From contig NW_026867443.1 of the NCBI RefSeq assembly GCF_020745735.1, forward strand, positions 62,001-126,000: a stretch of 64,000 nucleotides of DNA. The letters run 5' to 3'. The DNA is from Hemiscyllium ocellatum. Taxonomy: Eukaryota. Below the pieces are notes generated by a model. The model had not been told where the DNA came from. It did not search any database and saw only the letters and a list, made by a program, of their open reading frames with translations. The translations under genes and the position numbers were made by a program. This document shows, one piece after another, positions 15,055 to 33,309 of the stretch; position 1 is the stretch's first letter, and each line of letters opens with the position of its first letter.

Positions 15055-15945
15055 TTATTCCTTGACAGTGAAGTCACAGGGAGACAGGGAGATGAAGAAG
15101 GTGTTGGGTACACTTGCCTTTATTGGTCACTGCACTAAGTATCAGAGTTGGGACATCATTAACAGCTGTACAGGAAATTGGTGAGGCTATTTGGGAATAA
15201 CGTGGACAATTCTGATCATCCTGTGATAGGAAGGATGCTGTTAAACTTAAAATTCTGCAGAAAAGATTTACATGGATGTTGCCTGGAACTGGAGGGTTTG
15301 AACTGTCGGAAGAGGTTATTTTTCCTGCAGGATCGGAGACTGAGGGGTGGCCTTATAGATGTTTATAAAATCTTGACAGGCATGGACAGGGTGTATATCC
15401 CAGGTCTTTGCCTTGGGAAAGGGAATGCAAAACTAGAGGGTATAGGTTTAAGATGAGAGGCAAAAGATCCAAAAGGGACCTAAGGGTAACTTGTCACACA
15501 GAGGGTGGTGCGTGTCCAGATCGAGCTGTCAGAGAAAGTGCTGGAGACGGATACAATTATAACATTTAAAAGATGTTTGGATGGGTACATGAATAGGAAG
15601 GGTTTAGAGGGATGTGGGCTAAATGCTGGCAAATGGGATGAGGTCAGTTTTGGATATCTAGTTAGCATGGAGGAGTTAGACTGAAAGATCTGTTTCCACG
15701 CTGTCTGACTCTGTGAACATTAGTGGCTGGAAAAGCTGAGATCTTTTACCCTGAAGTGCCGGAGGCTGAGGAGTGACCTTACAGAGGTTTATAAAATCAT
15801 GAGGGACATAAATAATGTGAATAATGCAGGAAGGAGGTGAATGTTTTGTAGAGCTGGCAAACATATGCACAAAGATCATTCCAGGGATGAGGAATATCAG
15901 TTATGAAGATAGATTGGAGAATTTGGGACTGTCTTCTTTGGAGAA

Positions 15946-16147
15946 AGTTACAGATCACACAACATCAGGTTATAGTCCAACAGGTTAATGTGGAAGCACT
16001 AGCTTTTGGAGCGCCGCTGACAACCATTTGATGAAGGAGGGGCGCTCCGAAAGCTGGTGCTTCCAAATAAACCCCCTGTTGGACTATAACCTGGTGTTGT
16101 GTGATTTTTAACTTTGTCCACCCCAGTCCAACACCGGCACCTCCAAG
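15946..16147. mobile_element. Second-family fold-back Penelope-derived mini-element, 11-bp TSD
   Basis: TSD TCTTTGGAGAA (15935-15945 / 16148-16158); inverted arms CACACAACATCAGGTTATAGTCCAACAGG / CCTGTTGGACTATAACCTGGTGTTGTGTG; core TTGATGA-AGGAG...CTCC-GAAAGCTGG. Empty site near 30900-30912. Confidence 0.88.
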
Positions 16148-16598
16148 TCTTTGGAGAAGGCAGCGAGGAGAATTGTTCCAGAAATTCAAAATCAGGAGGG
16201 GCCTGGAACAGAGTAAATAGGGAGAAAATGATTCCACTTGTGAAAGGATTGAGACCGAGAGGCCACAGATTGAAAGTAATTGGAAAAGTAAGAAAAGTGA
16301 GATGAGGGAAAACATTTTCAGCCAGTGGGTGGTTAAGGTGTGGAATGCACTGCCTGAGAGTGTGGTGGAGGCAGCTTCAATTAAAACATTCCGAAGGGAA
16401 TGAGACTGTTATCTGAAAAGGAACAATGTGCAGGGTGACAGGGAGAAGGCAGGAGAATGACACTCAGTCAATTGCTCATTCGGAGAGCTAGTCCAGACAG
16501 GATGGACGGAATGGCCTTCTTGTGCACTGTAACAATTCTGTGATTGTGTGATTGAGCAGAGTTAAAGCTGGGGGAGGTGGGAGCTCGGTGTCTCACTG

Positions 16599-16600
<2 letters not shown>

Positions 16601-16630
<30 letters not shown>
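16601..16630 (+). repeat. (CTG)10 trinucleotide repeat in the J-C intron
   Basis: Direct read; arm B has (CAG)8 at 30440-30463. Confidence 0.95.
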
Positions 16631-17005
16631 AGGTCAGTGAGATCAGAGACTGGGACAGGGAGCCAGAGCTCACATCAAACTCTGCCCCGTGTCCGTCACA
16701 CTGAGACTGGCAGGAGGCTACTCACTGATTTCACTCCATGCTGCAGGAATGGGACCACAGGCTGCAAATGGGCAGAGCTCCTCCACACGGTGAGTAAAAC
16801 TTACTGACTTATATCTTGCTTTTTTTAAAGAGGGCATGAAAGTAAAGAAATACAGCTGGACACCCTGTTAGACACAGTGCTCCTCAATCAACCATTTCAT
16901 TCACTGCAGCTTCCCACTAACACCTTCAACAAATCAGCAACTGTATTTTAGAAAGTGTGTTTCAGTATTGACAGGGTTAATAACAGAGGATTGAGGTTTA
17001 CTTAC

Positions 17006-17040
17006 TCAGTCTGAGCTTGGTTCCTTTACCGAACGTAAGA
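17006..17040 (-). CDS. IGKJ: Unrearranged Ig light-chain J segment ([11 protein letters not shown])
   Basis: T CTT ACG TTC GGT AAA GGA ACC AAG CTC AGA CTG A|GTAAGT; FGxG motif, canonical donor, adjacent 23-RSS. Confidence 0.97.
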
Positions 17041-17079
17041 CACAGTGAGAGCTCCCAGTGCAGAGGCTGTACAAAAACC
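17041..17079 (+). other. J recombination signal, 23-nt spacer
   Basis: CACAGTG (17041-47) + 23 nt + ACAAAAACC (17071-79); perfect consensus. Confidence 0.98.
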
Positions 17080-17506
17080 TCAGCTCTCTGCTTTCCTCTT
17101 ATCACTGTCAACCTCTCTCTGTCTCTGTGTGTCTATCGCTCACTCTCACCCTCTCCCTGCCCCTCTCTGTCTCTCCCTCATTCATGTGTCTTTCTCTCTC
17201 TGTCTCTCTGGGTTGTTTCCAGCTGGGCTCGGGAGGTTTGTGAAATTTATTTTTCGATGTTAAATCTTGAGGCAGCTCTTCACATGTGGCCATGGAGTGT
17301 AAGAGAGAAACTAGAGGCCTTCAGTGAGCGTTGAGACACCACAGGGACTGGAGTGTGCCGTGGACAGTGGAAATCCCAGTTTTGGGTAATTTGATCAGTT
17401 TCATTCAGATCTAACTGGATATATCTAACTGGACTGTGTGTCATTATTATACATTTTATGTAACTGTGCGATGTGTCAGTCCAGGAGGTGGTGTTGTGCG
17501 TGTTGA

Positions 17507-17534
17507 GGTTTTTGTACAGCTCTGTGTCACTGTG
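17507..17534 (-). other. V recombination signal, 12-nt spacer
   Basis: Minus strand CACAGTG (17534-28) + ACACAGAGCTGT + ACAAAAACC (17515-07). V12/J23 is the kappa-type configuration, with deletional geometry. Confidence 0.98.
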
Positions 17535-17833
17535 TCGAGGGTAGCTGTAATACTGCTGACAGTAATAGTCAGCGACATCCTCATTCTGAACGTTGCTGAT
17601 TGTCAGGGTGAAACTGGTCCCTGATCCACTGCCGGTGAATCGATCGGAGACTCCTGTGAATCGAGTTGCTGCACTGTAGATCAGGAGAGAGGGTTTCTGA
17701 CCTTCTCGCTGCTGGTACCAAGCAAGGTTGCTGCTAATGCTTTGACTGGCCTTACAGGTGATGGTTGCGGTCTGGCCCAGTCCCACTGACAGCACCGGGG
17801 GAGACTGGGTCATGGTGATGTCCCCACTGATAC
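17535..17833 (-). CDS. IGKV: Ig light-chain V exon, open and rearrangement-competent
   Basis: (G)[99 protein letters not shown]; acceptor cctcAG at 17834-35. Confidence 0.98.
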
Positions 17834-18019
17834 CTGAGGGGTCAGAGAGAAACACAGTGAAGTCAGAACTGTCACAGAAAGAGCCTGTCAAATGAGAGAT
17901 TGTTGGAGACACTGAGCATTCCTCTGGTTTCAGCATTTTCCCTTCAATCACAAGTCAGTGGAATTGGAGTGAAATGGAGAGCAGCTAAAGATTCAAGGTG
18001 GAAGGAGAGAGATTTGTAC

Positions 18020-18068
18020 CTGCGACACAGAATGCCAGGGGCCAGATCAGCTGGATGTGTGAAATCAT
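18020..18068 (-). CDS. IGKV: Leader exon of cluster A (MISHIQLIWPLAFCVA-G)
   Basis: ATG at 18068, 49 nt, donor G|GTACAA, phase 1 matches the V exon; 186-nt intron. Confidence 0.93.
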
Positions 18069-18126
18069 GGTGTGTGCTCCTGTCCCTGTGCCTGGTTCCT
18101 GATAAACTCTCCCTTCACTGGGCTCT

Positions 18127-18208
18127 GCTTTATAAAGCTGCAGCCTGTGAGAGTCTGACTGGGTGTTCCTCAGTATGTAAATGGCATCAGGCAGAGAGAG
18201 CCACGTCA
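18127..18208 (-). promoter_or_regulatory. V promoter A: TATA box, variant octamer, CRE-like site
   Basis: TATAAA (18134-29) inside the palindrome GCTTTATAAAGC; ATTTACAT (18182-75, one mismatch to the Ig octamer ATTTGCAT); TGACGTGG further upstream. Confidence 0.72.
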
Positions 18209-19269
18209 GCCCCTCACACTTCCTCTTCTCTCTCTCTCTCTCTCTCTCTGTCTGTCTCAGAGTCATTGATGTGAACAACATTGAATGAGGCCATTTGGCC
18301 CATTGTGTCTGTGCTGGTAAACAGCGGTCTGATGACACTAATCCCATCCTCCAGCTCTTGGCCCGTTACCCTGGAGGTTACAGCAACACAAGGGAATATC
18401 TAAACACTGCTCCAATGTCACGAGAGTTTGTGACTCAACCAGCCTTTCAGGCAGTGAGTTCCAGACTCCCACCACCCTCTGGGTGAAAACATTTCTTCTC
18501 AACTCTCCTCTCACTCTCCAACTCGCCTGGCCATGGACTCACTCGTGTTCAGAACGATGAGAGGGGATCTGATTGAAACATATAAAATTGTAACAGGGCT
18601 GGGCAGGGAGGAGGTTTCCCCTGGTTGGGGAGTCTGGAACCAGGGGACACAGGCTCAGGGGGATACAGGGTAGACCATTTAGGACTGAGATGAGGAAACA
18701 TTTCTTCACTCAGAGGGTGGTCAACCTGTGGAATTCGCTACCACTGAAGGCTGTGGAGGACAAGGAACTGAATATATTCAAGAAAACAAGAGAGATAATT
18801 GTTTTGCATTTTAACAGCTTGAAGAGAATGGGGAGAAGGCAGGAATATGGCTTTGAGAGAGAGGATCAGCCATAGATCATAGAATGCCTACAGTGTGGAA
18901 ACAGGCCATTTGGCCCGACAAGCCCACACTGACCCTCGAAGAAATTATGACATTCAAAAATTGATACAGCCATGATCATACTGAATGACAGAGCAGACTC
19001 AAAGGGCCGAATGGCCTACTGCTGCTCCAAGTTTCTACGTGTCCATGTCTGTGTTACCTTCAATCTCTGTACCAGGTTTTTAAGTCTTTTACTCATGTAA
19101 AAAGTGCCATCCTACCTACCCTGTCACTGTCCTGAATAATCTTATCCCTCTCTATCAGGTCCCTGTTAAGCCTTCACTGCTCAAAGCTCACATTCAGGCA
19201 GCATCCTGGGAAATCTCCCCTGTACCCTCTCAGGTACAATCACATTCTTCCCAGAGTGTGGTGACCAGG

Positions 19270-19366
19270 ACCTGTCCCTCTCTCTCTCTGACTCACATCT
19301 GCCATTTCTTTCTCTCTACCTCTACCTCTCTCTCCCACTGTTAATCTCTTTCATGTTCTCTCTCTC

Positions 19367-19400
<34 letters not shown>

Positions 19401-19940
19401 CACTCTGTCTCATAGCCACTCTCTCCAACTCACTGATGCTTTCTCACTCCATCTTATCATCTGTTTCTCCATCTCTCACTGTCTCTGTTACTCGCTCCCT
19501 CTCTCACTTCAATTAAAAGCCTCCAATTGTTATCTGTCACTCTCTATTCCTCCCTCTTTCTCTCTCCTTCCCTCTCGACCTCCCAATTTACAGTCTCTCT
19601 CCCTCTCTCTCTCTGTCATTATAAATCTACCCATACTCATCTCTCTCCCTCACACTCAACCCTACCCTCCCTCTCAACTCTCTTCATGCTTAGTCTCACA
19701 CCCATCCTGTCTCTCACTCTCTCTCTCTCCTTGTCTCTTTGTCTCTCTCCATCCCTCTCAGTCACACTGTCTCACATCTTGTTTCTCTCTCTATCCCTCA
19801 GCCTCACCATTTCTACCTCCCTCTAACTCTCTTGGTCCCCTCACATATCTTACACCGTATCAGATGCTAGTCTCACTCTCACTCTCACAACTATTTTTCA
19901 CTCCATCTCTCTCTCTGCCTCACTGCTCTCTCTTTCTGAC
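19270..19940 (+). repeat. (TC)n-rich low-complexity tract; mirrored as (GA)n-rich at 27850-28400
   Basis: Polypyrimidine composition with (CT)n runs. Confidence 0.85.
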
Positions 19941-20749
19941 AGTGTCCTGGGTGGTGACAGTTGAATGCAGGATAAATCTCCCTCTACTCTGTCCCACTAA
20001 TGGATGTTAACCCTTGACCCCTGTCTTCTCCTGGAGTAAGGCCCTATTTCCACGTTGACCAGGGTTTGGCCTCTCTCAGGAAGATGGACAGATTCTGGTC
20101 AAATGAAGGGCTGTTCTGTGCTGTTGGCCTATTCTCACTGGGGACTGATTTGGACACAAACCTCATTCCATGAAGGCCTAGCAGAGAGAGGAGATCCTCA
20201 GATCATCAGTGTGAGTTGGAGGGACAGGACAGGCTCTGACCCACTGACCCATCCTGTCCATTCACAACATGTTCCAATCCCTTCCCCTCTCCTTCCCCTT
20301 CCATGGTCAGTCTTTTCTGAAATGGAGTGGTTCCCTTCCCTGTCTCACACCAAGGAGGAGATGAACAGATATTTAATGGGTAATGGGTTAAAGGATGATG
20401 GAGAGTGGGCAGGAAAGTGGAGTTGAGTCTGAGATGGGATCAGCCATGATTGTATTAAATGGTGGAGTGGGCTCGAGGGGCTGAATTGCCTGCTCCTGCT
20501 CCTAGTTCTTATGTTCCTCCACCCTCCCCCCCATCCCTCTTACTGCAACTTTGTGAACATTCTTGGAATGTTTGGACATTGAAGGAGTTATGTGAATTCA
20601 AGGATTTGTGTGGATTTAATGTGGGGACAGAATTGCACACGGGCTGTGATAGCTCCTGCGGTTGAATATCCTGCTGGCAGGCTTCCGCCTTCCATATACA
20701 GAAATGGGGAAGTGGGAGGTGGGAATGTACTGCGGGGTACACGGCACTG

Positions 20750-22880
20750 TCCTCTAGCAATGTGGTTGACTCTCTAGTGCCCTCTGAAATGGCCGAGCAA
20801 GGCTCTCAGTTGTATCAATTATGACAATGTTTCAAAAAGAAAATGAGACCGGACGGACCACAGGCATCGATCTAGACACCGAAAAGACAATGACAGAAAC
20901 AGCCCTGTCTACCCTGCTCCATCCTCCTTACTGACATCTGGGAGCTAGTGCCAAATTCAGGAGAGCTGTCTTACAGATGACTCAAGCAACAGCCTGACAC
21001 AGTCATACTCACAGAACCATATTACAGACAATGCCCCAGACACCACCATCACTGTCCCTGCATGTGTCCTGTCCCACCAGAAAGGCAGACCCAGCAGAGC
21101 TGATGACACAGTGGTCTACAGTCAGGAGGGAGTTACCCTGGGAAGTCTCAAATTGGCTCTGGACCCCATGAAGACTAATGAAACTAAGTTAAACATGGGC
21201 GAGGAAACCTCCTGGTGATTACAAGATATCTTGCTCCCTCCTGATGAATCAGTCTCTCCTGGATGTTGAACAACATTTGGAGGAAGCACTGAGGGTGATG
21301 ACAGCAGAGAGTGTACTCTGGGTTTGGGGTTTCAATGTCCACCACTGAGAGTGGCTCGGCAGCAGCATTACTGATCGAGCTGGTTGGTTCCTCATGGATG
21401 TAGCTGAGGGACTGGCTCTGCAGCTGGAACCAAAAGATGGAAAAAGATGCTTGACCCCATCCTCACCAATCTTGTGGCTGTAGATGCATCTATCCTTGAC
21501 AGTATTGGTAAGAGTGACCAGCACACAGTCCTTGTGGAAACAAAGTCTGACCTTCACATTGAGAATCCCCTCCATTGTGTTGTGTGGTACTATCACCGTA
21601 CTAAATAGGACAGACTCCGAACAGATATTGCAACTCAAGGCAAACTCGTAAATGGGGATGATTGCCAAAGATTGCACAATGCTCAGCACTCTCTCAACTC
21701 CTCAGATACTGAAGCAGTCCACGTGCAAATGCAACAATATCTGGACAATATCCAGGTTTTGTCTGAGAAGTGACATTTCCCATTGGTGCCATGCAAATGC
21801 CAGCCAATCACCATCACCAATAAGAGACAATCTTAACATCGCCCCTTGACAATCAATGCTATTACCATCACTGAATCCCCACTTCAACATTCTTGAGGTG
21901 CCATTGACCAGAAACACAACTGGATTCACCAAAGAAACACAGTGGTTACAAGAGCAAGTTAGAGGCTAGGAATACTGCATCGAGTAACTCACCTCCTGAT
22001 CCCCCAAAGCCTGTCAACCAAGTCAGGAGTGTGAGCAAATACTCCCCACTTGCCTGGACAGGTGCAGCTCCAACAACATTCATAGATTGATATTGTCACA
22101 GAGTCATACAGCACAGAAACAAACCCTTAAGCCAAACTTCTACATGCTGACCAGGTTTTCTGAAGTGAACTCATCTTATTTGCCTGCATTTCACACATAT
22201 CCCTTGAAACCTTTCCTATCTATGTCGATTGTATCCTATGTCTTTCTTATCCACTCAAAAAGCTTGATACCATCCAGAGCAAAGCAAACTCCTTGATTGG
22301 CATCGCATTCTCAAAGCATCCAAACTCACCGTCACTGACGCTCCATAGCAGCAGTGTGTATTATCGATAAGATGCACTGCAGAAATTCATCACTGATCTT
22401 CAGATAGCACCTTCCAAACCCATGGACAAAAATAGAAATTGTGGGAAAAGCTCAGCAGGTCAGGCAGCATCTTGGAGAGAAATCAAAATTAACATTTCAG
22501 GTTGAGCATGAAATATTAACTCTGATTTCTCTTCACAAATGCTGCCAGACCTGCTGAGCTTTTCCAGCACTTTCTATTTTTGTCTCGGATTTACAGCATC
22601 TGCAGTTCTTTTGGTTTCCCTCCAAACCCACGTTCACTTCCATTTAGAACAAGAGCAGCAGATACATGGGAACACTGTGAGCTGCAAGTTCCCCTCAAAA
22701 AAGCTTAGCATCCGGACTTGGAAATATGTCGCTGATCCCTCAGCTTGCTGGGTTAAAATGCTGGCATTGTGGGTCAACTTACAGCTTGTGGACGATAACA
22801 ATTCAGGATGGCAGCTTCCCACCACCTACTCCAGGGCAACTAGGCTCAGCCAGTGAAGCCCACTTCCCACAAGTGAATAT
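20750..22880 (+). mobile_element. Internally deleted CR1/L2-group LINE (APE + 3' RT), with a SINE core at its 5' end
   Basis: IWELVPNSGELSYR*LKQQPDTVILTEPY endonuclease motif; jumps to the late-RT region near 21650; 3' region interrupted by the 22425 insertion. Confidence 0.75.
22425..22616. mobile_element. Older fold-back Penelope-derived mini-element, ~14-bp imperfect TSD
   Basis: CTTCCAAACCCATG before and CCTCCAAACCCACG after; inverted arms GAAAAGCTCAGCAGGTCAGGCAGCAT / ATGCTGCCAGACCTGCTGAGCTTTTC. Confidence 0.72.
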
Positions 22881-24089
22881 GCAAAACCAAATGAAGTGTT
22901 CCTCAGGAGGGAGAGGGAATGTTCAGGGTCCTGAACTCCATTTCCCAGCCCAGGCAGTTTGTTTCCCAATGAATGAATGAGATGCCAATTTGAAGCCCAG
23001 GTTCAGGGCAGCCTCACTCTGTGGACATGAGGTCTATAGAGGGAATTGGAGATTGAGCTATAAAGGAAAGATTTGCTGGGTTACGGAGAGAGAGGGGGGG
23101 GGGTGGGACATCTAACTGGTCATTCAAAGGCTTGATGGGCTGAATGGCCTCCTCCTGTGCTGTCAGATTCCAGGGAGTGCAGACAGTTGACAGTTTTCTC
23201 CCGTCTCAGTAACAAACATCCAGCTGCTCCGAGCTCCTTCTTTCACTTCCTCTCTTGGTGAAGTTTCAACCTTGCGATCTGACAGTCTTTGCAGTTATTT
23301 GTTACACTGGGGCTTTCTGCTGTGGTCAGAATCTCTAATAATAAGTGCCCAATCATGACAATCACAGCAGCTAAGAGCAGTCAGGCTCACTGGAAACACA
23401 TTGGGAAGATCACAAGCCATCCTCTTCAGCTCCCGGTACAACTCCATCCCTCTCCCTGAGCACTGTCTGCTGCTCAACCAGACTCTTTACAACTTTGGCC
23501 TCATCTTTGGGGCTGATTTGAGGCCCAAATCCTCCACATCACAATTATCAGCCACTGAAAATCTCAACCATGTTTTTTGAGACCATTCCAATGTTATCCA
23601 GGCCCACATCACAGCCACTGATTTCCGTAAACATCAGCTCATCCCAAACTCTGCTGTCTGTGTTCAAACTCACACCAAGTCCACCCCACACCCCTGCCCA
23701 CGCCTCCCCACCCCACCATAACCACCACAATCCTCACTGACTGACATCACTCTTGGTCCAGCAACACCTCGATTTTTAAATTCTCATCCCTGTTCTCAAT
23801 CTGCTCCCTGTTCTTCCACCCTCCCTATCTCTGTGACCTCCTCCAAGCTGCCTCACTCAGTGTGATCAATAATCTTGGATATATGGCTCTCTGTTTCTTC
23901 ATCCAAGTCATTGAGAAATATCATGAAAAGCTGAGGTCCCAGCACAGATCCCTGGGAACCACATACTCACATCTGGCTCATTGGAACACACGCACATTAT
24001 CCTTCCTCTCTGTCTCCTGGACAGACCCATTCCTGACCCAAGGTAAATGCATTTCTCAAATTCCATCCAATTCCATGATTTGGAGATGC

Positions 24090-24205
24090 CGGTGTTGGAC
24101 TGTCGTGTAAATATAAAAATCACAGAACACCAGGTTCTAATGCAACAGGTTTGTTTGGAAGCATCAGCGTTTGGAGCGCTGCTCCTTCATCAGATGGTTG
24201 TGGAG
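24090..24205 (-). mobile_element. Family-B Penelope pLTR fragment with hammerhead-like core
   Basis: Minus strand CATCTGATGA-AGGAGC-AGC-GCTCC-AAACGCTGATGCTTCC...CCTGGTGTTCTGTGATTTT. Confidence 0.65.
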
Positions 24206-24708
24206 TGTAAGATCTGAATCAATGTTTCTTTTGTGGAACATTTTAAATGTCTTTTGGAATTCCCTATAGACAATAGCCATCGACATTCCCTTATATCCCA
24301 CATTAGTGAGCTCCTAACAAAGTGTAACCCGGTTAGTTGAAGATGTCTGAACCTTGTCAATCCATGCTGATTCTCTCGGACCAGTTCATATTTGTCCGTT
24401 ATTCTGTCTCTAAAAACAGACTCAATCACTTCCTGACAACAGACATTCAATGGAGATGTTCATTGTGATTGAGGCTCGTAAACAGCTAGCACTGACACGA
24501 GGGGCTGAACAGCTCCTCCTGTGCTGGCACCTTCTCTGTCTCCTGGACAAAGTATTTTACAGATTAAAAACTAAAGACCAGCAGCAAATTTTAAAACATA
24601 AATTAAAAACTCCTCAAATAATTTCCACATACAGGGCCAGGCGATGTGTAGTAATTGTACGATGGGGAAGCTGGTGGAGCCCATTGTAGCTCAGAGTGAC
24701 CACATCAA

Positions 24709-25208
24709 NNNNNNNNNNNNNNNNNNNNNNNNNNNNNNNNNNNNNNNNNNNNNNNNNNNNNNNNNNNNNNNNNNNNNNNNNNNNNNNNNNNNNNNNNNNN
24801 NNNNNNNNNNNNNNNNNNNNNNNNNNNNNNNNNNNNNNNNNNNNNNNNNNNNNNNNNNNNNNNNNNNNNNNNNNNNNNNNNNNNNNNNNNNNNNNNNNNN
24901 NNNNNNNNNNNNNNNNNNNNNNNNNNNNNNNNNNNNNNNNNNNNNNNNNNNNNNNNNNNNNNNNNNNNNNNNNNNNNNNNNNNNNNNNNNNNNNNNNNNN
25001 NNNNNNNNNNNNNNNNNNNNNNNNNNNNNNNNNNNNNNNNNNNNNNNNNNNNNNNNNNNNNNNNNNNNNNNNNNNNNNNNNNNNNNNNNNNNNNNNNNNN
25101 NNNNNNNNNNNNNNNNNNNNNNNNNNNNNNNNNNNNNNNNNNNNNNNNNNNNNNNNNNNNNNNNNNNNNNNNNNNNNNNNNNNNNNNNNNNNNNNNNNNN
25201 NNNNNNNN
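24709..25208. other. Assembly gap (exactly 500 N)
   Basis: Run of N; the round length suggests a placeholder scaffold join. Confidence 0.99.
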
Positions 25209-25754
25209 TTCACTAGAGTAAGTCAGCAAATCAATGACAAGGGAACAGTAAGACCAAAAGAATGGGACTGAACAATATATTCAGTAACACAACAATTAAG
25301 AGGAGGAGGGATGAAGGGCAGGAGGTCAGAGAGCATGCTGTAGGGGCCTGAAGGCTCTGCTGTCAATGGTGGGATGGAGGAAGCAGCAATGGGCAGGAGA
25401 CTAGAGACAGAAGATGGAAAGGGGAGAGGGAAAGTGATCTGCAGCAGGACACAGATTGAGGGAGGAGGGAGGCCATGGAGGCAATTGTTGGCAGTGAGCT
25501 CATTCTTGAACGACTTCAGATGTCAGACAAGGAAGGGACCACTCCATATCAGACAACAATTGGGGTTTATGGAATGTGACTTCAGGAAGCCGGGAGAGGA
25601 CATTGGAATCAATAGTTAGGACAAGCATGAATTAGTGTTTCTGTGGTCAGGGGACTGAAGTCGTGCAGAGACAGACAGTGTTGTTGAGACTGAAATAAGG
25701 GACCTTCATGATGGAGTGGATTTGGGGTTTGCAGCTCAAGTACTGGACAGTCCA

Positions 25755-27395
25755 GTGGGAAGGAGGCCCATGTTTACTGGTCTCTCCTGAAGCATCCAGT
25801 GAGAAGGAGGTCCATGTTTATTGGTGTCTGTTGGAGGTTCCAGTGGGACGGAGGTCCATGTTTACTGGTTCTATGGGAAGGTGGCTCATGTATACATCAT
25901 CATAGAGTCATAGAGGTTTACAGCATGGCATCAGGCCCTTCAGCCCAACTCATCCATGCTTACCAAGTTTCCAAAACTGAACAAATCCCATTTGCCTGTG
26001 TTTGGCCCAAATCTCTCTGAATCCTTCCTATCCATGTTGCTGTAAAAATCTCCTTGAAATGTAGTAACTGTACTCCCCCTCTACCACTTCCTCTGGCAGC
26101 TCATTACACATACACACCAACCTCTGTGTGAAAAGGTTGTCTCTCAGTTTCCTTTTAATCCTTTCCCCCCTCAACTTAAACCTATTCCTTCTAGTACTGG
26201 ATTCTCCTACCCTGGGGAAAAGACTTTGGCTATTTACCTTATCTATGACCCTCATGATTCTATAAACCTATATAAGGTCACCCCTCAATCTCCTGCATTC
26301 CCTGGAAAAAACATCTTGGCATATCCATCCTCGCCTTATAATTCAAACCCTCCAATCTTGGTAACATCCCTGTTAATCTTTCTTTTATTCAAACCAGCGT
26401 AATGACTTCCTTCCTATAGCAGGGTGAGCATAAATGTACACAGTGACCAAATGTGGCCTTACCGATGCCTTGTACAGCTGTAACATGATGTCCCAGCTCC
26501 TGTACTCTCTGCTTTGACCAGTGAAGGTGCACCTGCCAAATACCTTCTTCACCACCCTGTCTACCTGTGACACCATTTTCCAGGAACTATGTACCTGTAC
26601 CCCTCGGTCTCTCTGTTCAACAACACTCCCCATGGCTCTACCATTAATTGTGTAATTCCTGCCCTGGTTTGCCTTACCAAAATGTAACTCCTTCCATTCA
26701 TCAGAATTTCCATCTGGATTTGTTGACCCACTGGCCCAGTTGATGAAGATGACATTGCACTCTTCGATAACCTTCTTCCCTGTCCACGATGCCAACAATT
26801 TTAATGTCAGCCACAAACTTCCTGACCATTCCTGCTATTTTCTCTCCAAATTGTTCATATAAATGACGAACAACAGTGGATCCAGGATCGATTCTTGTGG
26901 CAGATGGCTGGTCACTGGCTTCCAGTCTGAAGAACAACCCTCTCTCACCAGCCTCTGCCTCCTATCATCAAATTTTATATCTAATTGGCTCACTCTCCTT
27001 GGATCCTATGTGATATAATCTTACTGAGCAATCTACCATGAGGAACCTTGTCTAAGGCCTTGCTAAAGTCCAAGTAGACAGAGTGTACTGCTCTACCTTT
27101 ATCAAGGTTTGTGATTACTTCTTCAAAAACTCAAGTCATCTACTTGTCTGAATCGGAAAGTCCAATGAATAGGAGGCCCATGTTTACTGATCTCTCTTGG
27201 AGGATCAAATCAGAAGTAGGCCAATGTTTACTGGTCTCTGTTGGAGATTCCAGCAGGAAGGAGCTCATGTTTACTGGTCTCTTCTGGGAACTTCAGTGGG
27301 AAGGAGGCCCATGTCTCTCTATCGATCAGCCTTGTGAACTAAATTCCATGTTTAGTGGACTCTGTTGGAGAGTCCAGTACGTCATGAACACATGG
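25755..27395 (+). repeat. ~44-bp minisatellite (GGAAGGAGGCCCATGTTTACTGGTCTC core) split in two by a CR1 insertion
   Basis: Core ATG at 25770, 25814, 25858, 25888 and at 27180, 27224, 27267, 27311, 27348. Confidence 0.8.
25895..27150 (-). mobile_element. CR1 LINE 3' portion
   Basis: Minus ORFs ELHFGKANQGRNYT...LYKASVRPHL and LFTQRLVCMCNELPEEVV; (CATAGAGT) tail at ~25900. Confidence 0.88.
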
Positions 27396-29336
27396 TGGGT
27401 ATGTGTTCAGTTCCTTTCTGTTGTAACAGTGTGATGCTCCAGCCCTCATCCCAGTCAAACAGCCTGATTCAGAGACTGATCACGGAAGGGGAAGGAAAGG
27501 GAAAAGGATTGGAACATGTTGTGGATGGACAGGATGGGTCACTGGGTCAGAAATTGTCCTGTCCCTCCAGCTCACACTGATGGCCTGAGGATCTCCTCTC
27601 TCTGCTGGGCCTTCGTGGAATGAGGTTTGTGTCCAAACCAGTCCCCAGTGAGAATAGGGCAACAGAACAGAACTCCCCTTCATTTGACAAGAATCTGTCC
27701 ATCGTCCTGAATGAGGTCAAACCCTGGTCAATGTGAGAAATGGGGAGTTACTCCAGGAAAAGACATGATTTTGGGTCAAGGGTTAACATCCATTAGTGGG
27801 GCAGAGCAGAGGGAGATTTATCCTGAATTCAACTTTCACCACCTTGGACACTGTGAGAAAGATAGAGAAACAAGACAAAGAGAGAGGTAGATGCAAATTG
27901 TGTGTGTGATCGAGCGATAGAAGGAGGGGCATCTGAGACAGTGTGTGATATGTGAAGGGGCCAAGAGAGAGGTAGAGGGAGGTAGACGTGGTGTGATTGA
28001 GGGATAGAGAGAGAGAGAAACAAGATGTGACTGATCAGGATGGATAGAGAAAAAGAGATAGGATGGGTGTGATACCAAGAGTGAAGGGAATCAAGAGAGA
28101 GTGGGTAGGGTTGAGTGTGAGAGAGAGAGACATGAGTATGGTAAGAGACAGAATGACAGAGATGGAGAGAGAGAGACTGTAGATTGGAGTGCAGAGAGGG
28201 AAGGAGAGACAGAGAGAGGAATAGAGAGGGGCAATTAACATTTGGAGGTTTTCAATTGAAGCGAGCAATGGAGCGAGTGATGGTGAGAGAGAAAGATGCA
28301 GAAATAGAGATTATGAGACGGAGTGAGGAAGTGTAAGTTGGAGAGAGTGGCTTTGAGACAGAGTGAGAGAGAAAGAGAGAGAGAGACAGAGACAGAGGGA
28401 CAAGTCCTGGTCACCACATTCTTGGAAGGATGTGATTGTACTTGAGGGGGTGCAGAGATTTACCAGGATGCTGCCTGGGATGGAGGGTCAGCTGTGGGGA
28501 AAGATTGGAATGGTTGGGGTTGTTTTCCATGCAGCAGTGAAGGCTGAGAGGGGACCTGATAGAGGGGGATAAGATTATTCAGGGCAGTGATAGGATGAGT
28601 AGGAAGGCACTTTTTACAAGAGTCAAGGACTCAATAACCAGGGACAGAGATTGAAGGAAAAATAGACATGGACACAAAGAAAGTGCTGCAGGAGTAGGCC
28701 ATTCGGCCCTTTGAGACTGTTCTGTCATTCAGTATGATCATGGCTGATCCTCTCTCTTGAAGTCATCTTCCTACTTTCCCCCCATTCCCTTCATGCTGTT
28801 AAAATGCAAAACAAATATATCTCTCTCTTTCTCTAAAATATATTCAGTTCCTTGTCCTCCATAGCCTTCAGTGGAAGATAATTCCACAGATCGACCATCC
28901 TCTGAGTGAAGAAATGTTTCCTCATCTCAGTCTGAAATGGTCTTCCCCATATCCCCCTGAGACTGTCCCCCCGGTTCCAGACTCCCCAACCAGGGGAAAC
29001 CTCCTCCCTGCCCAGCCCTGTTAGAATATTATACATTTCAATCAGATCCCCTCTTATCCTTCTGAGTCCAGGCCCAATCGAGTTGGAGATTGAGAGAAGG
29101 GTTAGGGAGAAATGTTTTCACCCAGAGGGTGGTGGGAGTCTGGAACTCACTGCCTGAAAGGCTGGTTGAGTCACAAACTCTCGTGACATTGGAGCAGTAT
29201 TTAGATATTCCCTTGTGTTGCTGTAGCCTCCAGGGTAATGGGCCAAGAGCTGGAGGATCATCAGATCTTTGTTTACCAGCACAGACACAATGGGCCAAAT
29301 GGCCTCATTCAGTGCTGTCCACATCAATGATTCTCT

Positions 29337-29372
<36 letters not shown>

Positions 29373-29386
29373 GAAGTGTGAGGGGC

Positions 29387-29468
29387 TGACGTGGCTCTCT
29401 CTGCCTGATGCCATTTACATACTGAGGAACACCCAGTCAGACTCTCACAGGCTGCAGCTTTATAAAGC
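29387..29468 (+). promoter_or_regulatory. V promoter B, identical to promoter A
   Basis: TGACGTGG 29387-94, ATTTACAT 29413-20, TATAAA 29461-66. Confidence 0.72.
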
Positions 29469-29526
29469 AGAGCCCAGTGAAGGGAGAGTTTATCAGGAAC
29501 CAGGCACAGGGACAGGAGCACACACC

Positions 29527-29575
29527 ATGATTTCACACATCCAGCTGATCTGGCCCCTGGCATTCTGTGTCGCAG
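29527..29575 (+). pseudogene. IGKV: Leader exon of cluster B (sequence intact, identical to A)
   Basis: ATGATTTCACAC...GTCGCAG|GTACAA. Confidence 0.92.
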
Positions 29576-29761
29576 GTACAAATCTCTCTCCTTCCACCTT
29601 GAATCTTTAGTTGCTCTCCATTTCACTCCAGTTCCACTGACTTGTGATTGAAGGGAAAATGCTGAAACCAGAGGAATGCTCAGTGTCTCCAACAATCTCT
29701 CATTTGACAGGCTCTTTCTGTGAAAGTTCTGACTTCACTGTGTTTCTCTCTGATCCCTCAG

Positions 29762-30080
29762 GTATCAGTGAGGACATCATCATGACCTAGTCTCCCCCGG
29801 TGCTGTCAGTGGGACTGGGCCAGACTGCAACCATCACCTGTAGGGCCATTAGCAGCTACCTTGCTTGGTACCTCTAGCGAGAAGGTCAGAAACCCTCTCT
29901 CCTGATCTATGCTGCAGCAACTCAACTCACAGGAATCTCCGAGTGATTCACCGGCAGTGGATCAGGGACCAGTTTCACCCTGACAATCAGCAACGTTCAG
30001 AATGAGGATGTCGCTGACTATTACTGTCAGCAGCATTACAGCTGGCCTTACTTTCGGTAAAGGAACCAAGCTCAGACTGA
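29762..30080 (+). pseudogene. IGKV: Pre-joined (germline-joined) VJ pseudogene
   Basis: V runs straight into J (CAGCAGCATTACAGCTGGCCT-TACTTTCGGTAAAGGAACCAAG) with no RSS. Stops TAG 29788-90, TAG 29875-77, TGA 29944-46; 9-nt CDR1 deletion; J out of frame; donor GGAAGT instead of GTAAGT. Confidence 0.96.
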
Positions 30081-31089
30081 GGAAGTAAACCTCAATCCTC
30101 TGTTATTAACCCTTTCAATCTCTAAACACAATTTATAAAACACAAATACTGAATTGTTGAAGTGTTGCAGTGAAGGAAATGTTTGATTGAGGAACACCGC
30201 GTCCCATACGGTGTACATCTGTATTTCGTTAGTCCTATAACCCCATTAAACAGCAAGATATAAGTCAGTAAGTTTTACTCATCGTGTGGAGGAGCTCTGT
30301 CCATTTGCAGCCTGTGGTCCCATTCCTGCAGCATGGAGTGAATTCAATGAGTAGCCTCCTGCCAGTCTCAGTGTGACGGACACGGGCAGAGTTTATGTGA
30401 GTTCTGGCTCCCTGTCCCAGTCTCTGATCTCACTGACCTCAGCAGCAGCAGCAGCAGCAGCAGCACAGTGAGACACCGAGCTCCCACCTCCCCCAGCTTT
30501 AACTCTGCTCAATCACATAATCACAGAATTGTCACATTGCACAAGGAGGCCATTCTGCCCATCCTGTCTGGACTGGCTCTCCGAATGAGCAATTCACTGA
30601 GTGTCATTCTCCTACCTTCTCCCTGTCACCCTGAACATTGTTGCTTTTCAAATATCAGTCTCATTCCCTTCGGAATGTTTTAATTGAAGCTGCCTCCACC
30701 ACACTCTCAGGCAGTGCATTCCACACCTTAACCACCCACTGGCCAAAATGTTGTTCCCCATCTCACTTTTGTGACTTTTCCCAATTGCCTTCAATCTGTG
30801 GTCTCTCGGTCTCAATCCTTTCTCTTGGGAACATTTTCTCCCTATTTACTGTATCCAGGCCCCTCCTGATTTTAATTCCTCCAACAAATCTCCTCTCAGC
30901 CTTCTCCAAAGAAGTCAGTCCCAAATTGTCCAAACTATCTTAATAACTGATGTTCCTCATCCCTGGAATGATCTTTGGGAATATTTTTGCCATTTCTACA
31001 AAATTTCACCTGCTTCCTGAATGATTTACATTATCTATGTCCCTCATGATTTTATAAACCTCTATAAGGTCACTCCTCAGACTCTTACA

Positions 31090-33290
31090 CTAGAGGGAAA
31101 AAAGTCTCAGCTTTTCCAGCTGCTCATAGTCATGGAGTCATACAGTGTGGAAACAGACATTTCAGTCCAACTTGCCTGTGTTAACCAGATATCCTAAATG
31201 ACCTCATCCCATTTGCCAGCATTTGGCTTACATCCTTCTAAACCCTTCCTATCCATGTTCCCATCCCAATGTGTTTTAAATGTTGTAATTTTATCCGCCT
31301 CCAACGCTTTCTCCAGCAGCTCGATCCAGACACACACCACCCTCTGCGTGACAGGTTACCACTCAGGTCCCTTTTGAATCTTTTGCCTCTCACCTTAAAC
31401 CTATGCCCTCTTGTTTTGGACTCCCGTTCCCAAGGAAAAGACCTTGGATATACACCTTGTCCATGCCCTTCATGATTTTCTGCACATCCATAAGGTCACC
31501 TCGAGGCCTTAGATGCTGCAGGGAAAATAGGCCCATTTCTTCAGCCTCTCCCGACAGCGGAAACTCTCCAATTCCTGGCCACATCCTTGTAAATCTTTTC
31601 CGCTGCCTTTTAAGTTTAACAACATCCTTCCTATCTCAGGATGATCAGAATTGTTCACATTATTCCCAAAGTGGCCTCACCAACTGCTGTACCACTGCAA
31701 CATCATGTCCCAACTCCTTTACTCAATGCAGTGACCAATAAAAGTAAGCATACCCAACACCTTCTTCATCTCCCTGTCTACCTGTGACTCCACTGTCAAG
31801 GAATAATGCACCTGCACCTGCACCTTCACCACTCAGTCTCTTTGTTCAGCAACACTCCGCAGGGCCCTACCATTAACCGTAAAAGTCCTGCCTTGGTTTG
31901 GCTTTGAAAAGTACAGCACTCACATTTATCTGAATTAAACTCCATCTGCCATTCCTCAGCCCACTGGCCCAGTTGGTCAAGATCCCATTGTACTCTTAGA
32001 CAGCCTTCTTCACTGGCCACGATGCCACCTGAAAATTCACCTGAACAGACTCTCACAACTCTGGCCCCTCCCTGCCTGTTACACTGCTACTACCCCAGTC
32101 TATATTCAAAAATTAAAGAACCATTTATAATGACTCTATCATGTTTGCAGATATCTGTAAATTCCTTGCATTTGTATTCCTCTGCATCTTTCCCATTGGG
32201 TGGTGATTTGTTGACTGTTCTGAGGATTCTGTGGTCCTTGGTGTTCCTCTCTGTTATTCCCTCCTGGCTCCCACAGCCCTGCCAAGTTAGTTTAAACCCT
32301 CACCAACTGCACTAGTAAATCACCCCAAAGGAACTCAGTCCCAGCTCGGTTCAGGAACAACGCTGCCTGGTCTGTCCAGGTCCCATCTCCCCCAGACCCA
32401 GTCTCAAGGTCCCAAGAATCTAAAGTCCTCCAACTTGGATCGTCTTTCCAGCTTCACATTCACCTGTGTTATCCTCCTGTTCCTATTCTCACTTGGGTGG
32501 GGCACTGGGAGAAATCCGGAGATTCTAACTTTTGAGATCCCAGTGCTAATTCCCTCCAGAGCCCCCTAAATTCTGACTGCAGGACCACATCCCTTTTCTC
32601 CCTCTGTCACAGGGACCATTGTGGACCACGACTGCTGCCTCTTCCCCCTCTCCCCTCAGGGTGGTTTGCAGCCGCTCAGAGACATCCTTGACCCTGGCAC
32701 CAGGGAGACAACACACCATCCTGGATTCCCATCTGCAACTGCAGAAACACCTATCGATTGCCCTCACTCTCGAATCTCCTCTCGCTCTCCCTCTTCCTTG
32801 TACCCCCTGTACAGCTGAGCCCCCCGTGGTGCCATGGGCTTGGCTCTGGCTGCTCTCCCCAGATGAACCATCATTCTCATCAGGATTCTGAACTGAATCC
32901 TGGTTGGAGAGTGCAATGCACTCAGGGGATTCCACTACTAGCTGCCTGGTCCTTTTAGACTGTCTGCTGCTCCCCCATTCCCTCTCTCCCTGCATTCGCT
33001 GAAGCTGCAGAGTGACCACATCTAGAAACGTGCTCTCCACAGAGCTCTCAGCCTCACGGACGCTCCGAACTGACACCAGCTGCTGCTCAAGCTCCGAAAC
33101 CCGGAGTTCCAACTGCTGTCACTGACCACACTTTCTGTTCTCATGGTATTCCAGGAGCTAGGAAGCATTCTGAAGTTCCCACCTAAATGCACACTCTCTT
33201 CACCCTTTGGTTGTCTCTTGGCAAAGTTCTGATGACAAACAGCTCCAGCAGGGCTCACAGTCCAGTGGGTTAAGTGTTCCAGGGTTTTGG
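31090..33290 (-). mobile_element. CR1 LINE, paralog of 11960-15720, internally deleted
   Basis: ORF 32546..33112 (MELRVSELEQQL...VCCLPGARVKDVSERLQ) and WQMEFNSDKC. Confidence 0.88.
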
Positions 33291-33309
33291 GGAAACTCTC
33301 CAGAAGACT

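What the first reader, a model, noticed from the sequence alone, without database searches (positions are those of the whole stretch)
17006..30080. A germline-joined VJ lying beside its unrearranged twin: before-and-after of a V(D)J-type event in one locus
Seen: cluster A has V, a perfect 12-RSS, 494 bp, a perfect 23-RSS and J. Cluster B lacks exactly that interval, and V is fused to J at 30046-30049 (TGG C[CT]T ACT TTC GGT). The join shows end trimming, a 2-nt CT overlap and no N nucleotides. The leader intron and the ~10 kb J-C intron are retained, so B is not a retrocopy. Established: RAG coding joints look like this, and germline-joined light-chain genes are known in elasmobranchs, including some type III/NS4 genes. 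Inference: RAG acted in the germ line on one copy after the cluster duplicated. The junction is now out of frame, either as originally joined or through later loss of CT from an in-frame CCT CTT ACT (W-P-L-T-F).
Basis: partly seen in the sequence, partly recalled or inferred. Interest (0 to 1): 0.8.

Follow-up and report, generated by a model that had tools for sequence, protein, structure and literature searches.

The report
Pre-joined dead antibody gene beside working twin
A shark antibody light-chain gene whose V and J pieces are already fused in the assembled genome lies next to an intact, unfused copy; the fused copy is a dead gene of a kind described in nurse sharks in 2000, so this is a clean new example, not a new phenomenon.

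Summary
The window holds two kappa-type (type III/NS4-like) light-chain clusters. They form the arms of a roughly 17 kb head-to-head inverted duplication, 87% identical.

- **Cluster A (minus strand)** looks intact: leader, 186-bp intron, V, consensus 12-RSS, consensus 23-RSS, J, an 11.4 kb intron and C.
- **Cluster B (plus strand)** is collinear but lacks exactly the 494 bp from RSS to RSS, plus about 6 coding-end bases. Both introns are kept, so it is not a retrocopy.

It has three stop codons in V, a 9-bp CDR1 deletion and an out-of-frame CDR3. The J splice donor and the C splice acceptor are both lost.

The assembly gap lies in the unique spacer between the arms. It touches neither cluster, but the adjacency and orientation of A and B rest on it.

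Public reads could not confirm the joint in other individuals.

Lee et al. 2000 (PMC2193156) described the same thing in nurse shark NS4 genes, including out-of-frame joined pseudogenes. Unchecked first-reader notes of this scan list several more joined kappa genes on other pieces of this genome. Some of them also sit beside a split copy in an inverted duplication. This is a new member of a known kind, of modest interest.

The parts
2534..20313 (-). Arm A of the inverted duplication. It carries the whole split kappa-type cluster (leader, V, RSSs, J, C).
   Evidence: Inverted repeats and blastn of the arms. Global alignment gives 87% identity over 14,875 aligned columns.
18020..18068 (-). Cluster A leader exon (ATG at 18068). 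An octamer-like ATTTACAT starts at 18182 and a TATA-like TTTATAAAGC at 18136, both upstream.
   Evidence: Pattern positions and sequence reading.
17535..17833 (-). Cluster A V exon. It is an open frame ending ...[11 protein letters not shown]. It follows a 186-bp leader intron (18019-17834).
   Evidence: Translation. Pfam V-set E 1.5e-16. The nearest database proteins are Chiloscyllium punctatum Ig V domains (77-87% identical), followed by mammalian kappa V regions.
17507..17534 (-). Consensus 12-RSS of V(A): CACAGTG, 12-bp spacer, ACAAAAACC.
   Evidence: Pattern scan; it is the only 12-RSS in the window.
17041..17079 (-). Consensus 23-RSS of J(A): GGTTTTTGT, 23-bp spacer, CACTGTG on the gene strand.
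   Evidence: Pattern scan; it is the only 23-RSS in the window.
17006..17040 (-). Cluster A J segment ([11 protein letters not shown]). The splice donor GT is at 17005-17004.
   Evidence: Alignment and tblastn.
5246..5574 (-). Cluster A C exon. The acceptor AG is at 5576-5575 and the stop codon at 5248-5246. The J-C intron is 11,431 bp.
   Evidence: Translation. Pfam C1-set E 6.6e-23. Coordinates.
24709..25208 (.). Assembly gap (500 N) in the unique spacer between the two arms. It lies outside both clusters.
   Evidence: N-run scan. The arm ends are at 20313 and 27473.
27473..43454 (+). Arm B of the inverted duplication. It carries the VJ-joined pseudogene cluster.
29527..29575 (+). Cluster B leader exon. 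Over the 381 bp from 29373 to 29753 (proximal promoter, leader and leader intron) it differs from A at only 4 positions.
   Evidence: Difference list. Coordinates.
29762..30080 (+). Cluster B fused VJ exon. Its defects are TAG at 29788-90, TAG at 29875-77, TGA at 29944-46 and a 9-bp CDR1 deletion after 29846. The joint lies at about 30046-30049. CDR3 is 25 nt, so the joint is out of frame. The J part runs from 30047 to 30080.
   Evidence: Pairwise alignment and codon alignment. Coordinates.
30081..30082 (+). Lost J splice donor: GG here, where A and the C. punctatum locus L002 have GT.
   Evidence: Alignments. Most short-read contigs of paralogues read T at 30082 (table 3).
40027..40357 (+). 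Cluster B C exon. The open frame is 92.7% identical to A at the protein level. The splice acceptor is changed from AG to TG at 40027-28. The stop codon is at 40355-57.
   Evidence: Pfam C1-set E 6.4e-21.

Best explanation
Cluster B is an inherited, VJ-joined kappa-type (type III/NS4-like) light-chain pseudogene. It sits head-to-head with a split, apparently functional paralogue (cluster A) in an old inverted segmental duplication.

The proposed sequence of events:
1. The cluster was duplicated.
2. In a germ-line cell, the 12/23 RSS pair of the B copy was cut as in lymphocyte V(D)J recombination.
3. The two coding ends lost a few bases and were ligated without added nucleotides.
4. The 494-bp RSS-ended piece was lost.

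The resulting exon is out of frame, and the gene has since decayed, or was already decaying. It has three stops, a CDR1 deletion and two lost splice sites. It does nothing as an antibody gene today.

Shown:
- the precise absence of the RSS-to-RSS interval;
- retained introns;
- collinear arms;
- the inactivating lesions;
- the derived status of the joined state.

Inferred:
- that RAG did the cutting;
- that it happened in germ cells;
- the order of joining and inactivation.
For: - **Position of the deletion.** Its ends lie within about 3 nt of both heptamers, among 16 indels of 40 bp or more in roughly 15 kb of aligned arm. For a randomly placed deletion, both ends within about 5 bp of these borders has a chance of order 1e-6 per indel.
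- **No RSS in B.** No RSS or RSS remnant is left in B. The only two consensus RSSs in 64 kb flank A's interval.
- **Not a retrocopy.** The 186-bp leader intron and the 9.9 kb J-C intron are retained and homologous to A's.
- **Joined state is derived.** A and the C. punctatum loci L001-L003 are split. A, L002 and L003 share a homologous intervening sequence; the short contig L001 ends just inside it.
- **No transposon signature.** No 3-5 bp target duplication flanks A's RSSs (sequence reading).
- **Direct precedent (PMC2193156).**
  - Nurse shark NS4 has about 50 genes, and about 10% are germline-joined.
  - The leader intron there is also 186 bp, and the intervening sequence is about 500 bp.
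  - The joints are trimmed and show little N region.
  - Two of the joined genes are pseudogenes. One (R19) has stop codons and a CDR3 that is one base out of frame.
  - The joined genes were shown in erythrocyte DNA of several sharks.
- **Another joined copy in DNA reads.** A contig from a run the tool guessed to be DNA, of the same species, spans a different joined VJ plus J flank. It is about 92% identical to B (record 29).
- **Other notes of this scan.** Unchecked first-reader notes list eight or more other joined kappa genes on other pieces of this genome.
Against: - **No independent read support.** The available runs are low-coverage Logan contigs dominated by paralogues. Contigs covering 30052 in three samples all carry the paralogue letter.
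- **Weak word evidence.** Only 2 of 4 sampled joint-region words were found, and that was in a run from the likely source animal.
- **A is not a clean 'before' state.** The V-J core has a different divergence history from the arms, and B's V end differs from A's. The joining may therefore have happened in an ancestor shared with other joined copies, or reached B by gene conversion, rather than at this locus.
- **Adjacency.** The position of A next to B rests on a scaffold gap.
Confidence: 0.85

Rival explanations
1. The joint is germline and RAG-type, but it was not made in this locus after this duplication. Either B inherited it from an older joined ancestor shared with other joined kappa copies (amplification of a split-plus-joined pair module), or B received it by gene conversion from another joined paralogue. 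This refines the best explanation and is nested within it. Only the claim that A and B are a 'before-and-after in one locus' would fall.
For: - The V-J neighbourhood (28980-30731) is a mosaic. K2P is 0.025-0.04 in the promoter, leader intron and distal J flank, 0.074 in V and 0.25 in the proximal J flank, against 0.15 in the arms.
- B's V end (HYSWP) is a family variant, not A's (YYSYP).
- A second joined VJ contig with a B-like J flank exists in DNA reads. B's J flank at 30090-30191 also occurs as an exact contig at high depth (records 29 and 30).
- Unchecked first-reader notes of this scan report further split-plus-joined inverted pairs on other pieces.
Against: - The other copies could not be read here, so shared or different joints are unknown.
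- The arms are collinear through the V-J region, with no breakpoints other than the RSS-to-RSS gap.
- Lee et al. inferred mostly independent joinings in nurse shark.
Confidence: 0.25
2. The joint is somatic. On this view, a rearranged lymphocyte allele, possibly hypermutated, or a chimeric read was built into the assembly, and the germline B locus is still split.
For: - No independent sample confirmed the joint.
- B-derived substitutions and two small deletions are enriched from the V exon to about 170 bp past J. This loosely resembles the reach of somatic hypermutation.
- A contig end (the gap) lies 4.3 kb upstream.
Against: - A single clone cannot dominate a consensus assembly from a polyclonal tissue.
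- B-derived changes outnumber A-derived ones by roughly 2-4 to 1 in the subregions with usable counts: 12:4 in V, 22:9 in the proximal J flank, 8:3 in the distal flank and 4:0 in the leader intron. The proximal J flank is hot in both lineages. This fits old divergence better than mutation confined to B.
- The C acceptor lesion lies 10 kb downstream, outside any hypermutation range.
- Unchecked first-reader notes of this scan list many joined kappa genes in the same assembly.
- Germline-joined NS4 genes were proven in erythrocyte DNA in nurse shark.
Confidence: 0.04
3. The 500-bp loss is an ordinary deletion (replication slippage or microhomology-mediated repair at CT) that only by chance removed the RSS-to-RSS interval.
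For: - A 2-nt CT microhomology is possible at the joint.
- The arms differ by 16 other indels of 40-1240 bp.
Against: - Both ends fall within about 3 nt of the heptamer borders.
- For 16 indels in roughly 15 kb the chance is of order 1e-5 (my estimate).
- The same pattern recurs in this gene family.
Confidence: 0.02
4. B keeps the primordial unsplit V exon, and A was split later by insertion of an RSS-ended element.
For: None specific; this is a historical hypothesis for germline-joined genes (discussed in PMC2193156).
Against: - A's intervening sequence is homologous to that of the C. punctatum clusters L002 and L003, so it predates the A/B pair.
- There is no target-site duplication at A's coding ends.
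- The family is mostly split.
Confidence: 0.01

Closest known systems
Germline-joined NS4 (type III/kappa) light-chain genes of the nurse shark, especially the pseudogenes R6 and R19 (Lee, Fitch, Flajnik & Hsu, J Exp Med 2000; PMC2193156)
   Same: - It is the same isotype family by V and C similarity.
- The leader intron is 186 bp in both.
- The V-J intervening sequence in split relatives is about 500 bp.
- The joint lacks both RSSs, has trimmed ends and shows no clear N region.
- It coexists with closely related split genes.
- Some members are pseudogenes with stops, and R19 has a CDR3 one base out of frame.
   Different: - The species of this window is not known to me. The best protein matches are bamboo shark, not nurse shark entries.
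- Here the physical context is visible: a head-to-head inverted duplication with a split partner and J-C introns of 10-11 kb. The 2000 study could not see this.
- Germline origin is not shown experimentally here.
Other germline-joined Ig genes of cartilaginous fish: all lambda/type II genes, skate type I genes, the nurse shark sigma-2/NS5 joined gene and IgM1gj (reviewed in PMC5192425)
   Same: They are inherited V(D)J-fused exons with retained introns, and are attributed to RAG activity in germ cells.
   Different: Those are mostly in frame and expressed, often early in life. Cluster B is multiply disabled.
Catfish germline VDJ-joined pseudo-locus and chicken VD-fused pseudogenes (as discussed in PMC2193156)
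   Same: They are germline-fused, non-functional V-region genes that persist in the genome.
   Different: They are heavy-chain genes. The chicken pseudogenes serve as gene-conversion donors, and no such role is indicated for B.

Membership tests
Elasmobranch kappa-type (type III/NS4) light-chain minicluster | V-set variable exon with kappa-like sequence, and a C1-set constant exon | tested here: met
   Pfam V-set E 1.5e-16. Pfam C1-set E 6.6e-23 for A and 6.4e-21 for B. The best protein hits are C. punctatum Ig V domains (77-87%), followed by mammalian kappa V regions (60-70%).
Elasmobranch kappa-type (type III/NS4) light-chain minicluster | [quoted passage not shown] | tested here: met
   tblastn finds exactly two V, two J and two C in the window. 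This is met for A; B has no RSS.
Elasmobranch kappa-type (type III/NS4) light-chain minicluster | NS4-like exon geometry: 186-bp leader intron and about 500-bp V-J intervening sequence | tested here: met
   The leader intron is 186 bp in both clusters, and A's V-J interval is 494 bp. The nurse shark values are 186 bp and 502-524 bp, with one shorter class.
Elasmobranch kappa-type (type III/NS4) light-chain minicluster | Phylogenetic grouping with NS4/type III rather than lambda, sigma or sigma-2 | not tested
   No tree with reference isotypes was built. The assignment rests on similarity and geometry.
Germline-joined Ig gene (inherited RAG-type coding joint) | V fused to J, with both RSSs and the intervening DNA absent and the flanks otherwise collinear with a split relative | tested here: met
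Germline-joined Ig gene (inherited RAG-type coding joint) | Coding-joint processing: loss of a few coding-end bases, with or without P nucleotides, and little or no N addition | tested here: met
   About 6 nt are lost relative to A-type ends, and every joint base can be assigned to V or J. The exact split between V and J is ambiguous, with 0-4 nt of overlap.
Germline-joined Ig gene (inherited RAG-type coding joint) | Introns retained (not a processed copy of a lymphocyte mRNA) | tested here: met
   The leader intron and the 9.9 kb J-C intron are present and homologous to A's.
Germline-joined Ig gene (inherited RAG-type coding joint) | Present in non-lymphoid DNA and in several individuals | tested here: inconclusive
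   Only low-coverage Logan contigs were available, and they are dominated by paralogues. No contig with B's own joint was listed. 2 of 4 joint-region words were found in one run of the probable source sample.
Germline-joined Ig gene (inherited RAG-type coding joint) | The joined state is derived: the nearest relatives are split and share the intervening sequence, and the split copy has no target-site duplication | tested here: met
   A and C. punctatum L001-L003 are split. The intervening sequence aligns between A, L002 and L003. No duplication is seen at A's coding ends.
Functional (expressible) germline-joined light chain, such as nurse shark R4 or R18 | Open reading frame through V-J, with intact splice sites | tested here: not met
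   There are three stops in V, an out-of-frame joint, a J donor changed from GT to GG and a C acceptor changed from AG to TG.
Processed retrocopy of a rearranged light-chain transcript | Absence of introns | tested here: not met
   Both introns are present.

The most novel reading that the evidence does not exclude
The split-plus-joined head-to-head pair may be a recurring module of this genome. Unchecked first-reader notes of this scan list further such kappa pairs, and similar IgM pairs, on other pieces.

Two readings would follow:
- One ancient germline RAG event was spread by segmental duplication of whole inverted pairs.
- Or inverted pairing itself favours germline joining of one arm.

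A bolder variant concerns the excess of B-lineage substitutions and small deletions, which runs from the V exon to about 170 bp past J. It could be an inherited trace of AID-type mutation of a transcribed joined gene in germ cells.
Probability: 0.1. Interest if true: 0.6.

Novelty: new member of a known kind. Interest (0 to 1): 0.25.

Why it matters
Germline-joined antibody genes are the standing evidence that the V(D)J recombinase has acted on inherited DNA. That point was made for this very gene family in 2000, so this locus does not change the picture.

What it adds is sequence-level context that the cloning-era work lacked:
- the joined pseudogene and a split partner are arms of one inverted duplication, if the scaffold join is right;
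- the J-C introns are 10-11 kb long;
- there is a gene-conversion-like island over the promoter, leader and leader intron.

A 2025 paper still states that the genomic distribution of shark Ig miniclusters is not well known (PMC12227049). A genome-wide census of such pairs could show how often germline joining happened and how joined copies spread.

Tried and rejected
- **Read support for the joint.** Only Logan contigs were available.
  - The runs hold about half of the sampled words of a 501-bp query, mostly words shared by the V family.
  - Laying four runs at 90% likeness brought in thousands of paralogue contigs of 80-300 nt.
  - None of the listed contigs bridges B's own joint.
  - A 91-bp joint query sampled only 4 words.
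  - The result is inconclusive, neither for nor against.
  - One of the four laid runs (X13, from another organism) showed the 186-bp leader intron spliced out, so it is RNA. It was of no use for the DNA question.
- **Exact-protein look-ups.** Two small ORFs next to or across the joint were looked up, in the hope of fetching other assemblies' copies. Neither is on record.
- **A joined bamboo-shark gene.** P0006 ends in ...SSLYT and looked as if it might be joined. Its contig shows a normal 12-RSS, so it is split.
- **Reinsertion of the excised piece.** No second copy of A's intervening sequence occurs in the window.
- **Hypermutation-like footprint.**
  - Tandem differences make up 40% of V-exon differences. 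They also make up 37% across the arms, where many are CpG decay in both lineages or alignment noise.
  - B-derived changes outnumber A-derived ones in every subregion with usable counts, and the proximal J flank is hot in both lineages.
  - I therefore do not accept a hypermutation reading.
- **Search of the scan's notes by sequence.** It returned nothing, and the operators had warned that a blank there means nothing.
- **Rest of the window.** Ten of the 21 long ORFs listed in the window were scanned against Pfam, and none matched.
- **Species identification.** I ran no further search on it.


Full report
**What is in the window**

Two immunoglobulin light-chain clusters are present and no others. 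tblastn with A's V, J and C finds exactly two of each.

They lie on opposite strands with their 5' ends facing each other. They form the arms of a large inverted duplication. Arm A runs from about 2534 to 20313 on the minus strand. Arm B runs from about 27473 to 43454 on the plus strand.

A global alignment gives 87% identity over 14,875 aligned columns, with 16 indels of 40 bp or more. At this divergence (K2P 0.15) the arms are paralogues. They are not haplotypes or an assembly duplicate.

The V exon is a V-set domain and the C exons are C1-set domains. The nearest database proteins are Chiloscyllium punctatum Ig V domains at 77-87% identity, followed by mammalian kappa V regions. This is therefore a kappa-type (type III/NS4-like) family in what is probably an orectolobiform shark. 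I did not identify the species.

**The gap, tested first**

The 500-N run at 24709-25208 lies in the unique 7.2 kb spacer between the arm ends. It is 4.4 kb from arm A and 2.3 kb from arm B.

- No exon, intron or reading frame of either cluster crosses it.
- All the sequence evidence for A lies in the left contig, and all of it for B lies in the right contig.
- What does depend on the gap is that A and B are neighbours, 11.5 kb apart leader to leader, and inverted relative to each other. I could not test that continuity.
- Unchecked first-reader notes of this scan describe the same head-to-head split-plus-joined arrangement on other pieces of this genome. This makes the arrangement plausible, but it is not proof.

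**Cluster A (split)**

| Feature | Coordinates | Note |
|---|---|---|
| Leader | 18068-18020 | |
| Leader intron | 18019-17834 | 186 bp |
| V exon | 17833-17535 | open frame |
| 12-RSS | 17534-17507 | CACAGTG-12-ACAAAAACC |
| Between nonamers | 17506-17080 | 427 bp |
| 23-RSS | 17079-17041 | GGTTTTTGT-23-CACTGTG |
| J | 17040-17006 | donor GT present |
| J-C intron | 17005-5575 | 11,431 bp |
| C exon | 5574-5246 | acceptor AG and stop present |

These are the only two consensus RSSs in 64 kb.

**Cluster B (joined)**

| Feature | Coordinates | Note |
|---|---|---|
| Leader | 29527-29575 | |
| Leader intron | 29576-29761 | 186 bp |
| Fused VJ exon | 29762-30080 | |
| J-C intron | 30081-40028 | 9,948 bp |
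| C exon | 40029-40357 | |

- The arm alignment stops at A 17543 / B 30043 and resumes at A 17039 / B 30047.
- The global alignment puts a single 500-bp gap in B at this spot.
- B therefore lacks the 494-bp interval plus about six coding-end bases.
- The joint reads AGC TGG CCT TAC TTT CGG, starting at 30040.
- There are 25 nt between the Cys and Phe codons, so J is read out of frame and a TAA follows at 30058.
- Every base at the joint can be assigned to V or to J, and no RSS remnant is left.

**Limits on reading the joint**

They probably were not. B's V ends in TGG CCT where A has TAC CCT CGA. Bamboo-shark relatives have V ends such as AGC TGG TCT TGG and AGC TCC CCT TGA. Their J starts also vary. 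Depending on the true ancestor, the overlap could be 0 to about 4 nt.

The statement 'trimmed, no N needed' is safe. The exact trimming is not.

- In-frame stops at 29788 (CAG to TAG), 29875 (CAG to TAG) and 29944 (CGA to TGA).
- A 9-bp deletion in CDR1, after 29846.
- The out-of-frame joint.
- The J splice donor changed from GT to GG (30082).
- The C-exon acceptor changed from AG to TG (40027).

The C exon itself is still an open frame, with dN/dS 0.47 against A. The V exon shows 14.5 non-synonymous against 2.5 synonymous differences. This is as expected once constraint is gone. It also has no bearing on present function.

**Why an RSS-directed germline joint is the best explanation**

1. The deletion ends sit within about 3 nt of both heptamers. 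For a randomly placed indel in roughly 15 kb the chance of this is of order 1e-6, or about 1e-5 for the 16 large indels seen. This is my estimate.
2. Both introns are kept, so B is not a processed copy.
3. The joined state is derived. A and three C. punctatum clusters are split, and A's intervening sequence aligns with that of L002 and L003.
4. A's coding ends show no 3-5 bp target duplication, which argues against a later insertion into A.
5. The excised piece is not reinserted anywhere in the window.
6. The process is documented for this family (Lee et al. 2000, PMC2193156).
   - Nurse shark has about 50 NS4 genes, and about 10% are germline-joined.
   - The leader intron there is 186 bp, and the intervening sequence about 500 bp.
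   - The joints are trimmed, and little is attributable to N addition.
   - Two of the joined genes are pseudogenes. One of them, R19, has stop codons and a CDR3 one base out of frame.
   - Germline origin was shown there by Southern blots and PCR on erythrocyte DNA from seven sharks.

RAG involvement and germ-cell timing remain inferences here, as they were in that paper.

**Was the joint confirmed in reads?**

No. The public runs are kept only as Logan contigs.

- They hold about half of the sampled words of a 501-bp query. These are mostly words common to the multi-copy V family.
- When four runs were laid on 29000-31000, no listed contig bridged B's own joint.
- Contigs covering 30052 in three samples of the same species all read the paralogue letter.
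- One run from the probable source animal held 2 of 4 sampled joint-region words, and one of those words is widely shared across species.
- One useful by-product is a 185-nt contig from a run the tool guessed to be DNA, of the same species. It spans a different joined VJ plus its J flank and is about 92% identical to B (record 29).
- Somatic joints are each unique and should not assemble into such contigs. This points to further inherited joined copies.
- That agrees with unchecked first-reader notes of this scan, which list eight or more joined kappa genes elsewhere in this genome.

A somatic or chimeric origin for B's joint stays formally open. I rate it at about 4%, for three reasons:
- a single lymphocyte clone cannot dominate a consensus assembly;
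- B's lesions extend 10 kb downstream to the C acceptor;
- the family precedent is strong.

**History of the pair**

| Region | K2P |
|---|---|
| Arms | 0.151 |
| Promoter, leader and leader intron (29230-29761) | 0.025 |
| V exon | 0.074 |
| Proximal J flank (30081-30251) | 0.25 |
| Distal J flank (30252-30731) | 0.039 |

Within the first of these regions, only 4 differences fall in the 381 bp from 29373 to 29753.

The core of the gene has therefore been homogenised since the duplication, most simply by gene conversion between the arms or from other family members.

I polarised the A/B differences using bamboo-shark paralogues as outgroups.

| Region | B-derived | A-derived |
|---|---|---|
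| Promoter | 2 | 1 |
| Leader intron | 4 | 0 |
| V exon | 12 | 4 |
| Proximal J flank | 22 | 9 |
| Distal J flank | 8 | 3 |

- B-derived changes outnumber A-derived ones in every subregion with usable counts. The proximal J flank is hot in both lineages.
- That pattern fits a patch of older divergence, together with a functional A copy that is held close to the family consensus. It fits a mutation process confined to B less well.
- Tandem differences are frequent in the V exon (40%) but also across the arms (37%).
- I therefore do not endorse the hypermutation-like reading made in a neighbouring note.

A rough dating uses the rate implied in Lee et al., 0.134 substitutions per site per 180 Myr. 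It puts the duplication near 100 Myr ago and the last homogenisation of the core near 17-26 Myr ago. These figures are only indicative.

A is therefore a diverged paralogue, not literally the 'before' state of B. The joint may even be inherited from an ancestor shared with other joined copies. I rate that refinement at about 25%.

**Comparison with what is known, and verdict**

This is the phenomenon described for nurse shark NS4 genes in 2000 and summarised in reviews (PMC5192425). It matches down to the intron length, the size of the intervening sequence and the existence of out-of-frame joined pseudogenes.

The new detail is the physical context: an inverted, head-to-head pair with 10-11 kb J-C introns and a conversion island. 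I found no description of this in the searched literature. A 2025 paper says the genomic distribution of these miniclusters is not well known.

I file the finding as a new member of a known kind. Confidence is high in the anatomy, good (0.85) in the mechanism, and the interest is modest.

Noticed in passing
window 29373-29753 against 18222-17842: There is an island of near-identity between the arms over the proximal promoter (octamer-like ATTTACAT, TATA), the leader and the leader intron. It has 4 differences in 381 bp, all B-derived, while the arms differ by about 13%. Gene conversion is the simplest cause. B's promoter therefore looks intact although the gene is dead.
   Followed up: partly
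window 30081-30251 against 17005-16821: The first 170 bp or so of the J-C intron differ by 21%. There are 36 substitutions, a 12-bp deletion and a 2-bp deletion in B, and Ts/Tv is 0.8. The next 480 bp differ by under 4%. Polarised with bamboo-shark paralogues, 22 changes are B-derived and 9 are A-derived. An exact contig of B's 30090-30191 occurs at high depth in a run the tool guessed to be DNA, so this flank type may be shared by other copies.
   Followed up: partly
Read laying record 29 of run X6, laid on window 30007-30191: A 185-nt contig from a run the tool guessed to be DNA, of the same species, spans a V-J joint and the J flank. It has 14 differences and 2 gaps relative to B. It is probably another inherited joined kappa copy.
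   Followed up: no
window 13316-14555: A 1,240-bp stretch in A's J-C intron has no counterpart in B. Other arm-specific blocks are 14645-14870 and 15950-16162 in A, and 35110-35324, 39303-39484 and 42480-42784 in B. These are likely repeat insertions or deletions. They were not classified.
   Followed up: no
window 16590-16633 and 30440-30466: A (CTG)n/(CAG)n microsatellite lies about 400 bp into the J-C intron in both arms. B's copy is 6 bp shorter.
   Followed up: no
L003 (C. punctatum BEZZ01005289.1), V at about 10001-10561 and J flank at about 11220-11270: A split bamboo-shark kappa cluster has Tyr in place of the first conserved Cys of V. Its J is followed by GG rather than GT, the same donor change as in B. 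It is probably a split pseudogene. This shows that the donor variant is not unique to B.
   Followed up: no
window 25751-25869 and 27171-27314: Two short arrays of a related 44-bp tandem repeat lie in the spacer and at the edge of arm B, to the right of the assembly gap.
   Followed up: no
window 5574 and 17006: With A's donor after CTG A and its acceptor before TC CGT, the J-C junction codon would be ATC (Ile) followed by Arg. Lee et al. report that in nurse shark NS4 the residue before the first residue of C is arginine and that the last base of J is A. This may be a small species difference or a different numbering.
   Followed up: no
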